Shown piece after piece: positions 144 through 6,360 of a stretch of 64,000 bases of DNA. Made by a program: the position numbers and the translations under genes. Positions within the stretch are counted from its first letter, which is position 1, and every line of letters begins with the position of its first letter. A model generated the notes under the pieces. That model searched no databases. It was not told where the DNA came from and was given only the letters and a program-made list of their open reading frames with translations. The DNA is from Pocillopora damicornis (lineage: Eukaryota): assembly GCF_003704095.1 (NCBI RefSeq), contig NW_020845389.1:310001-374000 (forward strand), given 5' to 3'.

Positions 144-1687
144 ATGAAAACTCAGCTGGTATGGTGTTTCGCAGTCATCTTCGTTGGCTCCGTGACCGCC
201 AAGTCAATTCATAGTGGTAAGTAAGAATATTTCTCGATAATAAATTGCTCTAGTACACTACACTCATAGTGGAGACGGATTACGACCTACCAAGGTTTTA
301 CGAATCCAGATGCTTAGAGCTGGCGTACATTTATGCAATTCAAAAAATGTATTTTGACTTTCCTAATCCGTTCATCGTTTCTCGTCAAGTAATTAATAAT
401 TAAAGCAATTAAAGTGCCAGGAGACAATCTATCCTTAACCATAGTGGCACTCTTTAGAAATCAAATCAAATCGCGAGGACTCAGCAAAAGGATTATGTGG
501 AATTGTTTTAGCTCAAAGACTTCACTGCCTATCTTTGTAGGCTCACTTGGTATCCAAATGACATATTTGCCAAGTTATGTGAAAGAATTGATTCTTGCGT
601 ACTTTCATCCCGCATTATCCGCTAAAAAAAAATCCGTTTCATCAATACATTTAAATTGATACAAATTCCAGAAAACGTTGTTTTCTCGATATCATGATCG
701 CGTGATAGCTTTAGAGTTTTCCAGTCTAGGAACATCTCATATGTATTATATGAATCTAATCTAAAATTACAAATGCGAACTCTTTTTCATGCCAAAATGA
801 AATTCAAACAATCACGTTTGATCATCTCGACCACTAGCATTAATCTTAGCTCTGAGAATGTCCGTACAAAAAAAACCCAAGATAAAAGGCACAATTTACG
901 TTTCAGGATAAGGTTTGTTTCATTTCATATACATTTTCCACGGTGGAGAAGTATCAAATATGATCAAAAACTAATTGTAAATTATATTTCAGTCGCCAGG
1001 CGATGTGGTTGCACATCTGCTGTTTGTCCACCCCCAGATGCACCTTGTCCTCCTCCACCTGCCCCTCCAGCACCAGTACCACCTGGCCCTCCAGGGCCTC
1101 CCGGACTACCAGGCTCTAACGGATGTCAAGGTCCTCCAGGGATGGCCGGTTGTCCTGGGCTTAAAGGGCCACCAGGCAGTGGAGGGCCACTCGGGCCACC
1201 GGGGCCTATTGGACTTCCCGGTAAACCCGCTCTTCCCGGTCCACCCGGGCCACCTGGCTGCATGGGATTACCTGGCCTCCCTGGATGTGCGGGAATGAAA
1301 GGACCAGCAGGACCAGTTGGGCCGCCAGGCCCGGTAGGACCAGCAGGACCACCTGCCCTCCCAGGCCCTCCTGGACTACCTGGAAAAATAGGCTGTGCTG
1401 GTGCTCCCGGATGCCCCGGTTTCAAAGGCGAGCCCGGAGCGATGGGACCAATAGGACCTCCAGGAGCTCCAGGAAAACCCGCTCTTCCTGGCCCTCCTGG
1501 CCAACCCGGAAGTATGGGACCGCCAGGTCTCCCCGGTTGCAGCGGCATGAAAGGATGCAACGGCAGTCCCGGAGCCCCAGGATTTGTTGGCCCTGCTGGT
1601 CCTCCAGGACCCCCAGGATCTCCGGGTCCACCAGGACCACCTGCTGAGCCACCGTGCGCCCCTTGCGGTGGTGGCTGCTGCGGTTAA
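144..1687 (+). CDS. Gene 1: long minicollagen-like protein (~255 aa), 62-triplet Cys-containing collagen helix with short atypical Cys ends
   Basis: Exons 144-216 ([24 protein letters not shown], signal peptide; donor GTAAGT at 217, phase 1) and 993-1687 (acceptor TTTCAG). The spliced product reads ...HSVARR|[27 protein letters not shown]-(Gly-X-Y)62 with three ALP [27 protein letters not shown]. AATAAA at 1829. Confidence 0.9.
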
Positions 1688-4895: not shown

Positions 4896-6360
4896 ATGAA
4901 TTCCAAGATAATATTTTTATTTGTTCTTGCCTTCGTCTGCTACGCACATGCTAGGTCGACAAAAGGTAAGTTCGCTAGTTTATTTTGTAAAGTTTGAATT
5001 AGGTCAAACGTGAAACATAATAGCTTTGATAAAAAACAATTAAGATGTTTATGTTAAGATAATAAATCTCTGCCAAACTTTTGCAAGTCAAAATCATCAG
5101 CTTGTGCAACAGATTTTCGAAGTAAGAACCACGAATGCCTAATATTGAGAAAAATTATTCCACCAATTTTCGTCAAACTGTGTAATCTATTTTAGACCTT
5201 TGTATGGGATGATTGTCTAAGAAAAGTGACTTACTTAACACAACGCACACCAGGTGGCATCAAATCGAAAAGAAAACCAGTTCTATCACCGAATACAATC
5301 CTAAATATAATTTAAGTTCGTTTCCTGCCAGTTTGAACTAAATTTTTCGACCCGATGATCTGAACCAATGAGAATTAATAATTTTAATGTAATTGGAACG
5401 ATTGATGATTGTCATATTTCAGGACAGGAAGCAGCTTAGGAAGAAGTTCATTAATCTCGGCAGAGTTTTACTTATCGAGTTTATGGCCATTATCCTTTCG
5501 TATCATGAACCTTTTTTTTTTTTCATCTTCTTCCGACGATTTAGACCGTAAAATTAGTTGATACCCGCCTGTCATAGCGAAATCATGTTAGCAGGTGGTA
5601 CTTTTCTCAACAGCTTCTTTGGATTGAATCAATTGATTTTCATTTGCCTTTCTACGACGAGGTAGCCTTTTACATTGCAACGTATTCAAGTGAGGAAGAT
5701 TTCACTTCCATTTACCCTTCCTATTCATTTACTCCTCTTAGTCATATGAATTCAATTTAAAATGGAAACCTAAGTTACTTTATTATTTTCTGGAATATGT
5801 GTTTACTAATAAGTGTGGATGCAGGTGGTCATTCAACTGTAGAGTGACTGGTGAGTTAAAAAGGCAGTGCTGTCACTGGAGTAGGGTTATAACGTTTCAC
5901 GATGCTTGGGCGAAAGGTGCAATATTTTTTCTTTTGCACTCTCTTTATTTCAACAGGCACCAAACGTTGTTGTCCCTGTTGTCCACCTCCTCCACCACCA
6001 CCACCACCAGTTCAACAGGTCGCTGGACCACAGGGACCACCCGGACAATCTGGATGTTCTGGTCCCCCAGGAGCTCCCGGATGCCCAGGATGGAAAGGAT
6101 GCCCAGGACCAGTCGGTCTCCCAGGACCTCCTGGTGCCCCTGGACCTCTCGGACCAATAGGACCAATGGGACCTAAAGGATGCGCTGGAAGCCCAGGCCT
6201 CCCCGGTTGCCCCGGACTCAAAGGATGCCCAGGATGTGCCGGTCCACCAGGACCTCCAGGAGCTCCTGGACCTCAGGGAGTTCCCGGAGCCGCTGCCCCA
6301 GTCCCATGCCCACCTCCACCACCTACTCCATGCTGCCCTGCTCCCGCATGCTGCAAGTAA
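4896..6360 (+). CDS. Gene 2: minicollagen-like protein (~157 aa), 30 Gly-X-Y triplets, CCPCC and CCPAPACC termini
   Basis: Exons 4896-4965 ([23 protein letters not shown]; phase-1 donor 4966) and 5957-6360. Product: ...STKGTKR|CCPCC-polyPro-(GXY)30[21 protein letters not shown]. Probable 5'UTR exon donor GTGAGT at 4516. AATAAA at 6384. Confidence 0.92.

What the first reader, a model, noticed from the sequence alone, without database searches (positions are those of the whole stretch)
1085..1642. Gene 1 collagen helix has a strict 14-triplet (42-aa) period
Seen: of 62 triplets, Gly is replaced by Ala (ALP) at triplets 17, 31 and 45. The motif Gly-Cys-X-Gly-(L/M/F)-Lys recurs at triplets 8-9, 23-24, 37-38 and 51-52. 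Established: canonical minicollagen helices are about 14-16 triplets long, and Y-position Lys in G-X-K-G is the lysyl hydroxylase and cross-link context. Inference: the chain is a roughly 4-fold concatemer of a minicollagen helix, with regularly spaced kinks and Cys/Lys cross-link points about 12 nm apart (42 x ~0.29 nm).
Basis: partly seen in the sequence, partly recalled or inferred. Interest (0 to 1): 0.75.

Follow-up and report, generated by a model that had tools for sequence, protein, structure and literature searches.

The report
Four-unit coral minicollagen-like stinging-capsule collagen
A coral gene encodes an unusually long, cysteine-studded relative of the short collagens that build stinging capsules; it grew by doubling an older two-unit helix, leaving weak points and cross-link residues about every 12 nm along the rod.

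Summary
Window 1085-1642 encodes 62 Gly-X-Y triplets, with Ala for Gly at triplets 17, 31 and 45 and G-C-x-G-(L/M/F)-K at triplets 8, 23, 37 and 51. "Strict" applies to the Ala sites only; the motif gaps are 15, 14 and 14.

It is an expressed two-exon gene. Spliced poly-A RNA contigs from two studies confirm the intron at 217-992. The gene heads a cluster carrying 15 canonical minicollagen Cys-rich domains, but its own termini are not canonical.

The strongest internal repeat is 28 triplets, not 14. Triplets 16-30 and 44-58 are 35/45 identical, with synonymous sites saturated, so the duplication is old and selected. Two neighbouring paralogs of about 31 triplets carry the same motif exactly 126 nt apart. 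Genome-wide, the motif occurs only in these three genes.

The helix is best read as a doubled two-unit helix. Kinks, hydroxylysine and cross-links remain untested, and no orthologs could be retrieved.

A 2025 paper describes Nematostella NvNCol-7, with 12-15-triplet blocks separated by single alanines, so this is a new variant of a known kind. The scan had already noted the shared register in gene 2 of this same window (s1-786090), not on other DNA.

The parts
144..216 (+). Exon 1: start codon and signal peptide ([24 protein letters not shown] plus one base of the next codon). It ends at a phase-1 GT donor.
   Evidence: Sequence read and translated. Spliced RNA contigs X7 and X15 cover 134-215 and join to 992.
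217..992 (+). Intron of 776 nt, GT..AG.
   Evidence: table 5: joint 215>992, 'skips 776, GT..AG (cut +1)'. It is seen in one contig each of X7 (oligo-dT cDNA) and X15 (poly-A), which come from two studies.
993..1687 (+). Exon 2: end of the propeptide (..VARR), N-terminal Cys cluster, proline-rich linker, 62-triplet helix, C-terminal Cys cluster and TAA stop (1685-1687).
   Evidence: Pfam Collagen PF01391, E 6.2e-30, 4 stretches.
1004..1084 (+). Non-canonical N-terminal Cys cluster (C-G-C-x4-C-x6-C) and proline-rich linker ([12 protein letters not shown]).
   Evidence: Translation. The canonical-CRD scan finds 15 sites in the window and none here.
1085..1642 (+). Collagen helix of 62 triplets (186 residues, about 53 nm). 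It has 8 Cys, all at the X position, 7 Lys and 1 Glu.
1229..1237 (+). Ala-Leu-Pro triplet 17 (Ala in the Gly position), in the context K-P-A-L-P-G-P-P-G.
1355..1363 (+). Ala-Leu-Pro triplet 31, in the context P-P-A-L-P-G-P-P-G. Its DNA context resembles both the helix start and the Ala45 context.
   Evidence: 36/49 nt against 1069-1117 (rank 2 of 1431 window pairs) and 39/54 nt against the Ala45 context.
1481..1489 (+). Ala-Leu-Pro triplet 45, in the context K-P-A-L-P-G-P-P-G.
1148..1165 (+). Motif copy 1: G-C-P-G-L-K (triplets 8-9). The partner Cys is at triplet 5.
1283..1300 (+). Motif copy 2: G-C-A-G-M-K (triplets 23-24). The partner Cys is at triplet 20.
1409..1426 (+). Motif copy 3: G-C-P-G-F-K (triplets 37-38). 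The partner Cys is at triplet 35.
1535..1552 (+). Motif copy 4: G-C-S-G-M-K (triplets 51-52). The partner Cys is at triplet 53.
1220..1354 (+). Duplicated block, copy 1 (triplets 16-30).
   Evidence: triplet alignment score 26.6 against a shuffle mean of 10.2, z 8.2, reached by 0 of 1000 shuffles; 63% nt identity against a median of 47% over 561 block pairs.
1472..1606 (+). Duplicated block, copy 2 (triplets 44-58). It is 35/45 residues identical to copy 1.
   Evidence: pS 0.85 (saturated), pN 0.18.
1643..1684 (+). C-terminal tail [14 protein letters not shown]: a reduced Cys cluster (C-x2-C-x3-CC), not a canonical CRD.
4896..6360 (+). Paralog 'gene 2'. The signal-peptide exon is 4896-4965 and the main exon ends at 6360. 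The helix has about 31 triplets, with G-C-P-G-W-K and G-C-P-G-L-K 126 nt apart and no Ala-for-Gly inside the helix.

Best explanation
Gene 1 is an expressed, secreted, minicollagen-like structural protein of coral stinging capsules (nematocysts or spirocysts).

Shown here:
- The gene has a signal-peptide exon, a phase-1 intron, and one exon that encodes the RR end of a propeptide, a small Cys cluster, a proline-rich linker, a 62-triplet helix and a second small Cys cluster.
- The helix arose by an old internal duplication at a shift of 28-30 triplets. What was duplicated was a two-unit helix of the kind still present in the two adjacent paralogs of about 31 triplets.
- All three genes keep the G-C-x-G-(hydrophobic)-K motif 126 nt apart. 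In this genome the motif occurs in no other gene.

Inferred:
- Three chains form a homotrimeric rod about 53 nm long.
- The three register-preserving Gly-to-Ala sites lie about 14, 26 and 38 nm from the N-terminal end. Each sits in the same proline-rich context (P-A-L-P-G-P-P-G). They act as local soft spots or hinges rather than fixed kinks.
- The outward-facing X-position Cys pairs and Y-position Lys, repeating about every 12 nm, let rods be cross-linked side by side, possibly in a 14-triplet stagger. This would supplement or replace the end-to-end polymerisation through canonical Cys-rich domains that ordinary minicollagens use.
For: - Anatomy.
- Expression and splicing: spliced contigs in an oligo-dT run (X7) and a poly-A run (X15) from two studies labelled coral or marine metagenome.
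- Family context: 15 canonical CX3CX3CX3CX3CC domains, all on the + strand of the window, and short-helix minicollagen genes of 12 and 16 triplets next door.
- Common gene plan: genes 0, 1 and 2 share the two-exon, phase-1 layout, similar signal peptides, and KR or RR before the first Cys.
- Duplication: shift-28 z 5.0, 6.6 and 3.4. Block 16-30 against 44-58 gives z 8.2, 35/45 aa identical, pS 0.85 and pN 0.18. That is an old duplication under purifying selection.
- Spacing: 126 nt in gene 0 and in gene 2, and 135, 126, 126 nt in gene 1, so 4 of 5 intervals are 126 nt. Both Ala intervals are 126 nt.
- Exclusivity: the motif pattern has 7 hits in 234 Mb. Six are in these three genes and the seventh contains a stop codon. 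The reversed-pattern control gives 0. The Trp variant has 2 hits, in genes 0 and 2. The ALP context has 3 hits, all in gene 1.
- Distinctness: the 10 other best collagen loci in the genome are charged ECM-type helices. None has Ala in an internal Gly position (one, L011, has it only at its last triplet), and Cys occurs only at the last one or two triplets, in 3 of the 10.
- Precedent for non-disulfide cross-links: Nematostella minicollagens are not released from mature capsules by reduction (PMC3145756, passage read).
- Feasibility: lysyl-oxidase genes are present in this genome.
Against: - No ortholog was retrieved, so conservation across species is unknown.
- There is no cell-type expression data, so the capsule location rests only on gene neighbourhood and protein architecture.
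- Units a and b within a half show no significant similarity. The 14-triplet unit is therefore defined by motif spacing, not by demonstrable homology.
- One motif interval is 15 triplets, not 14.
- Shift 12 scores about as well as shift 14.
- Cys positions are not fixed between duplicated blocks: Cys20 aligns with Ser48, and Cys53 with Pro25.
- Trimerisation, hinge behaviour, Lys hydroxylation and every cross-link are untested.
- I did not find a citable passage for the X-Lys-Gly hydroxylase consensus. It is recalled knowledge.
Confidence: 0.62

Rival explanations
1. The periodicity is only a fossil of duplication history. The gene is a real capsule collagen, but the 14-triplet spacing of Ala, Cys and Lys has no mechanical or assembly role.
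For: - One duplication at shift 28 accounts for Ala17/Ala45 and for the motif pairs 23/51 and 8/37.
- Cys positions drift between the copies.
- Shift 12 is as strong as shift 14.
- One motif interval is 15 triplets.
Against: - Synonymous sites between the copies are saturated while pN is 0.18, so the protein sequence is being maintained.
- 126-nt spacing holds in 4 of 5 intervals across three diverged paralogs, even though single-triplet indels occurred elsewhere. The Cys-to-motif gap is 3 triplets in some units and 2 in another, and the K-to-GKP gap is 6 against 5.
- The interval created at the duplication junction (23 to 37) is also 14 triplets.
- All three Ala sites share an identical 8-residue context that occurs nowhere else in the genome.
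Confidence: 0.22
2. It is not a stinging-capsule protein but another secreted short-chain collagen (mesoglea, mucus or skeletal organic matrix) that happens to lie beside the minicollagen cluster.
For: - It has no canonical CRD at either end.
- Its helix is 2-4 times longer than published minicollagens.
- No cell-type data were available.
Against: - It has the same orientation, exon plan and signal peptide/propeptide/Cys/polyproline/helix/Cys order as the neighbouring genes.
- Its near-uncharged, Pro- and Cys-rich helix is unlike the charged ECM-type collagens of this genome.
- The Nematostella 'minicollagen-like' proteins with incomplete features, and NvNCol-7, are cnidocyte-specific (PMC12549020, passage read).
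Confidence: 0.1
3. The Ala sites are not hinges. They mark junctions where the long chain pairs with the half-length chains of genes 0 and 2 in mixed trimers, so that gene 1 acts as a splint joining two short helices.
For: - 62 triplets is about twice the roughly 31 triplets of genes 0 and 2, and Ala31 sits at the midpoint.
- The three genes share the motif register.
Against: - This is pure inference, with no data on chain composition.
- Ala17 and Ala45 would lie inside the partner helices, which this model does not explain.
- The helix lengths are only approximately 2:1.
Confidence: 0.06

Closest known systems
Canonical cnidarian minicollagens (Hydra NCol-1 type; Nematostella NvNCol-1, -3, -4)
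   Same: - Signal peptide, then a short propeptide ending in a dibasic site.
- Terminal Cys clusters and proline-rich linkers around a central Gly-X-Y helix.
- Location in a cluster of capsule-protein genes.
- A helix unit length of about 14 triplets.
   Different: - The helix has 62 triplets, against 12-16 in general and 14-27 in Nematostella (PMC7981951 and PMC3145756, passages read).
- The termini lack the CX3CX3CX3CX3CC pattern.
- Eight Cys and seven Lys lie inside the helix.
- Three Gly positions are Ala.
NvNCol-7 of Nematostella vectensis (PMC12549020, eLife 2025; passage read)
   Same: It is a cnidocyte collagen built from many minicollagen-length blocks ('mostly 12 or 15 Gly-X-Y repeats') that are separated by a single alanine or by degenerate triplets.
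   Different: [quoted passage not shown] Gene 1 has 186 helix residues in 4 segments and reduced Cys clusters.
- The passage I read does not mention in-helix Cys/Lys motifs.
Neighbouring paralogs gene 0 (just upstream of the window, L003) and gene 2 (window 4896-6360)
   Same: - Same exon plan and the same G-C-x-G-(W/L)-K motif at 126-nt spacing.
- X-position Cys inside the helix.
- Vicinal-Cys termini.
- Gene 0 is 65% identical to gene 1 residues 12-130.
   Different: - Their helices are half as long, at about 31 triplets.
- They have no Ala-for-Gly inside the helix.
- Gene 0 has Gly (G-L-N) where gene 1 has A-L-P after G-K-P.
Natural triple-helix interruptions in C1q, collectins and collagen IV
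   Same: A non-Gly residue or indel at a defined point of a collagen rod is associated with local flexibility or a bend. (The C1q Ala-for-Gly example is recalled; the kink proposal is cited in PMC11923368.)
   Different: Those kinks are proposed for interruptions that differ between the chains of a heterotrimer. Here the substitution keeps the register and would be the same in all three chains of a homotrimer. It also recurs periodically.
Staggered, covalently cross-linked fibrillar collagens (D-period; recalled knowledge)
   Same: Cross-linkable residues recur at a fixed axial distance, which would allow a staggered side-by-side assembly.
   Different: The period would be about 12 nm rather than 67 nm. 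The chemistry would probably be disulfide, with or without lysine-derived bonds. Nothing has been shown experimentally.

Membership tests
Collagen triple-helix repeat (Pfam PF01391) | Match to the family profile above the curated cut-off | tested here: met
   E 6.2e-30, 103.2 bits against a cut-off of 27.2, 4 stretches.
Minicollagen (canonical) | N-terminal signal peptide followed by a short propeptide ending in a dibasic (KR) site | tested here: met
   - Exon 1 encodes a hydrophobic leader.
- The mature part follows ..KSIHSVARR, so the site is RR rather than KR in gene 1. It is KR in genes 0 and 2.
- No cleavage predictor was run.
Minicollagen (canonical) | Short central helix of about 12-16 Gly-X-Y repeats (up to 27 in Nematostella) | tested here: not met
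   The helix has 62 triplets. The literature ranges come from passages read.
Minicollagen (canonical) | Polyproline stretches flanking the helix | tested here: inconclusive
   The N-terminal side is clear ([12 protein letters not shown]). The C-terminal side is only PPAEPP.
Minicollagen (canonical) | Terminal Cys-rich domains with the pattern CX3CX3CX3CX3CC | tested here: not met
   The regex scan of all six frames finds 15 canonical CRDs in the window and none in gene 1. The gene 1 termini are C-x-C-x4-C-x6-C and C-x2-C-x3-CC.
Minicollagen (canonical) | Cnidocyte-specific expression and location in the capsule wall or tubule | not testable with these tools
   Only bulk coral RNA contigs were available.
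NvNCol-7-type extended minicollagen | Helix made of blocks of about 12-15 triplets separated by a single Ala or by degenerate triplets | tested here: met
   The uninterrupted Gly segments are 16, 13, 13 and 17 triplets, separated by single Ala-for-Gly triplets. The family definition comes from PMC12549020.
NvNCol-7-type extended minicollagen | [quoted passage not shown] | tested here: not met
   no canonical CRD, 186 helix residues, 4 segments.
NvNCol-7-type extended minicollagen | Sequence homology to NvNCol-7 | not tested

The most novel reading that the evidence does not exclude
Genes 0, 1 and 2 define an undescribed class of capsule collagens that polymerise sideways rather than end to end. 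Rods would stagger by 14 triplets (12 nm) and lock through in-helix Cys pairs and Y-position Lys. This would be a miniature D-periodic cross-linked fibril that arose independently of fibrillar collagens. Gene 1 would be the four-period long form, with its Ala sites as built-in hinges that let the lattice bend or stretch during discharge.
Probability: 0.15. Interest if true: 0.7.

Novelty: new variant of a known kind. Interest (0 to 1): 0.45.

Why it matters
Minicollagens are thought to build the pressure-resistant capsule wall mainly by disulfide reshuffling of their terminal Cys-rich domains. This gene and its two neighbours carry reduced termini instead. Their Cys and Lys sit inside the helix at a fixed 126-nt spacing.

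If those residues are real cross-link points, they would be a second, lateral way of assembling capsule collagens. They might also help explain why anthozoan capsules resist reduction (PMC3145756).

The gene is also a clear small-scale example of how long block-built capsule collagens such as NvNCol-7 can arise, by doubling helices and degrading the junction glycine to alanine. In addition, it is a short, natural, periodic Gly-to-Ala design that could be tested as a biomaterial model.

Tried and rejected
DNA-level 126-nt repeat
- Tandem Repeats Finder found only 9, 18 and 36-nt periods.
- The repeat finder found only generic Gly-Pro-Pro-type families.
- The repeat is visible only in triplet-aware statistics.
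- My first triplet-alignment script used too harsh a score and a wrong slice length, and it crashed. I replaced it.

Orthologs
- Word-indexed search with the whole of exon 2: 969 hits among a capped 8000 candidates, all generic collagens. The window's own protein was not listed.
- The same search restricted to residues 1-60: 9 hits at E >= 0.22, none related.
- Gene 0 as query: 85 hits, best E 1.8e-7, none related.
- Among all 364 proteins fetched, the motif regex hit 1, a 1814-aa collagen, once.
- Exhaustive phmmer: 31,309 proteins at E <= 0.001. All 150 listed were long collagens or phage fibres of at least 646 aa, and the lowest listed score was 143 bits. A short relative scoring below that would be invisible, so this result does not prove absence. 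I read six of the top hits; they were generic.
- JGI metagenome scan: 1 locus, L013, which is an unrelated collagen-like ORF.
- The ESM Atlas could not be used.

Literature
- Four searches found no description of in-helix Cys/Lys motifs in minicollagens: minicollagen terms, minicollagen with coral, tandem and cluster, 'minicollagen-like' (4 papers held, 3 listed) and minicollagen with NCol-7 and alanine. The searches are word-based, supplements were closed, and the Nematostella 'minicollagen-like' sequences may sit in those supplements.
- I found no citable sentence for the X-Lys-Gly hydroxylase consensus in PMC7619536.
- The 'minicollagen-like' lectin-bearing proteins of PMC2629781 are a different family.

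Not attempted
- Structure prediction, because the tool folds single chains only and a monomer model says nothing about a triple helix.
- Exon 2 was searched on its own.
- The organism is labelled only 'coral' by the RNA runs. The resemblance of the assembly size (234.35 Mb, 4393 contigs) to a published Pocillopora assembly is recall and was not tested.
Full report
What is at the coordinates

Window 1085-1642, read in the + frame, gives 186 residues, or 62 triplets. Fifty-nine triplets start with Gly. Three start with Ala, always as Ala-Leu-Pro, at triplets 17, 31 and 45. The motif G-C-x-G-(L/M/F)-K starts at triplets 8, 23, 37 and 51.

The helix holds eight Cys, all at the X position, in four pairs: triplets 5/8, 20/23, 35/37 and 51/53. 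It has seven Lys. Four of these are at Y, all inside the motif, and three are at X. It has a single acidic residue. The stretches of uninterrupted Gly are 16, 13, 13 and 17 triplets long. At 0.286 nm per residue, the rod would be about 53 nm long and a 42-residue unit 12.0 nm.

Is it more than chance, and how strict is the period?

- The Ala sites are 126 and 126 nt apart. The motif copies are 135, 126 and 126 nt apart. So "strict" applies to Ala only.
- Four motif copies were never reached in 200,000 shuffles of the X and Y residues. The maximum was 3, seen in 10 shuffles.
- Four sites with all gaps of 14 or 15 triplets occur in 140 of 521,855 combinations. Three Ala sites at gaps 14, 14 occur in 34 of 37,820.
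- These figures overstate independence, because the copies share descent.
- Tandem Repeats Finder sees no 126-nt period.
- Against 5000 triplet shuffles, the strongest self-match is at a shift of 28 triplets: z 5.0 for residues, 6.6 for informative residues, 3.4 for nucleotides.
- Shift 14 is moderate (z 2.2, 3.3, 2.65; p 0.0044). Shift 12 is about equal to it.

The gene

- Exon 1 (144-216) encodes a hydrophobic signal peptide.
- The intron at 217-992 has GT..AG ends.
- Exon 2 (993-1687) encodes everything else.
- The splice is seen directly in one contig each from an oligo-dT cDNA run (X7) and a poly-A run (X15), which belong to two different studies. A third RNA-library contig (X4) is colinear with the DNA.
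- Within the helix, these contigs differ from the window only at the synonymous site 1429. X4 also carries an Ala-to-Pro difference at 1658, in the C-terminal Cys cluster.
- The RNA runs are labelled coral or marine metagenome. The assembly has 234.35 Mb in 4393 contigs.
- As the operators require, I searched exon 2 alone and never built the joined protein.

Family context

The window carries 15 canonical minicollagen Cys-rich domains (CX3CX3CX3CX3CC), all on the + strand. It also carries further collagen genes with helices of 31, 12, 16 and 16 triplets.

Gene 1 has no canonical domain. After ..VARR comes C-G-C-x4-C-x6-C and a proline-rich linker. After the helix comes AEPP-C-x2-C-x3-CC.

Two neighbours are its closest relatives. 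Gene 0 lies about 2.5 kb upstream of the window (L003) and is 65% identical over residues 12-130. Gene 2 lies at window 4896-6360. All three share the signal-peptide exon, the phase-1 intron, and KR or RR immediately before the first Cys.

Genes 0 and 2 have helices of about 31 triplets. Each carries two motif copies (G-C-P-G-W-K, then G-C-Q/P-G-L-K) exactly 126 nt apart.

Across the whole 234-Mb assembly:
- The motif pattern has 7 hits. Six are in these three genes and the seventh contains a stop codon. The reversed control gives 0.
- The Trp variant has 2 hits, in genes 0 and 2.
- The G-x-P-A-L-P-G-P-P-G pattern has 3 hits, all in gene 1.
- The ten other best collagen loci are charged ECM-type helices. 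None has Ala in an internal Gly position, and Cys appears only at the last one or two triplets, in three of them.

How the 62-triplet helix arose

A triplet-register local alignment of the two halves picks out triplets 16-30 against 44-58. The score is 26.6 against a shuffle mean of 10.2 (z 8.2), reached by 0 of 1000 shuffles. The two blocks are 35/45 residues and 63% of nucleotides identical, against a median of 47% over 561 block pairs. Synonymous sites are saturated (pS 0.85), while pN is 0.18. The duplication is therefore old and both copies have been kept by selection.

The front halves (units a and a') share the Cys-x-x-Cys-motif layout but differ by single-triplet indels. As a result the shift runs from 30 to 29 to 28 along the chain. 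This reading is by eye, and the statistics for it alone are not significant. Units a and b within a half show no significant similarity (z -0.3 and -0.6 for gene 1 and -0.7 for gene 0). Gene 2 is the exception at z 2.2, p 0.033.

The DNA around Ala31 resembles two other places:
- the very start of the helix: 36 of 49 nt, rank 2 of 1431 in-register window pairs, including a shared CTA Leu codon;
- the Ala45 context: 39 of 54 nt.
So I cannot say whether Ala31 is a degraded first glycine of the second copy or a copy of the other Ala sites.

In gene 0, the position matching Ala17 is Gly (G-K-P-G-L-N). The substitution is therefore specific to the gene 1 lineage and predates its internal duplication.

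My conclusion is that gene 1 is a doubled two-unit helix.

Function

The best-supported reading is a structural protein of stinging capsules. This is inferred from neighbourhood and architecture only.

Three further points are my own inference or recall:
- X-position side chains point outward.
- Cys residues two or three triplets apart cannot pair within one staggered trimer.
- The helix Cys would therefore link neighbouring rods.

Relevant literature and genome checks:
- Ordinary minicollagens polymerise through their terminal domains (abstract of PMC4863159, seen in the listing).
- Nematostella capsule minicollagens resist reduction, which points to additional covalent links (PMC3145756, passage read).
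- Lysyl-oxidase genes exist in this genome. That shows feasibility only.

A Gly-to-Ala change that is the same in all three chains keeps the register. The kink proposal I could read concerns interruptions that differ between chains (PMC11923368). I therefore expect soft spots or hinges rather than fixed kinks. Each Ala sits in the same imino-rich context, P-A-L-P-G-P-P-G. None of this was testable here.

Comparison with what is known

Published helix lengths are:
- 12-16 triplets (PMC7981951);
- about 14 (PMC2629781);
- about 15 (PMC12549020);
- 14-27 in Nematostella (PMC3145756).
All were read as passages.

The closest precedent is NvNCol-7 (PMC12549020). [quoted passage not shown] The same paper mentions four "minicollagen-like" proteins with incomplete features. 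Two of them are named as expressed in spirocytes (NvNcol-like-3 and -4); the passage I read does not give the cell type of the other two.

Gene 1 shares the Ala-delimited block design. It differs in size, in its reduced termini, and in the in-helix Cys/Lys motif. I found no description of that motif in four word searches. Supplements were closed and may hold relevant sequences.

Limits

No ortholog was found. The word-indexed searches were swamped or empty. The exhaustive search listed only long collagens down to 143 bits. The metagenome scan returned one unrelated locus. The window's own protein is absent from these protein collections, so relatives may simply be unannotated. Conservation of the 126-nt spacing in two old paralogs is the only substitute.

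Verdict

- This is a new variant of a known kind.
- It is of moderate interest.

Noticed in passing
L003 45-114 and 1483-1842 (G000:C2024, about 2.5 kb upstream of the window start): There is an unlisted upstream paralog, 'gene 0'. It has a signal-peptide exon and a main exon with a 31-triplet helix, G-C-P-G-W-K and G-C-Q-G-L-K 126 nt apart, and only CC..CC termini. It is the closest relative of gene 1 in the genome.
   Followed up: yes
window 14964-62000, + strand: Fifteen canonical CX3CX3CX3CX3CC domains lie on one strand: 14964, 23169, 23409, 30993, 38244, 38343, 38547, 39445, 39646, 46529, 46955, 54836, 60150, 61783 and 61909. The whole window is one large capsule-protein gene cluster.
   Followed up: partly
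   Followed up: no
window 1658: The RNA-library contig X4 carries G>C here, which changes C-A-P-C to C-P-P-C in the C-terminal Cys cluster. X7 and X15 match the window. It may be an allele or a strain difference.
   Followed up: no
L002 1486-2424, - strand (G000:C2060): This is a 312-aa charged collagen ORF. Its helix is broken at regular intervals by short two-Cys loops (G-x-C-x-x-G-x-x-C-x-G). That is a different kind of periodic interruption from the one in gene 1.
   Followed up: no
G000:C2:619082-647069: Seven exon-level matches to the lysyl-oxidase family lie within about 28 kb. They suggest roughly three tandem LOX genes.
   Followed up: no
window 1220-1354 vs 1472-1606: The synonymous difference between the duplicated blocks is 0.85, above the 0.75 expected at saturation. 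With only about 38 synonymous sites this may be noise, or it may reflect pressure against DNA-level repeats.
   Followed up: partly
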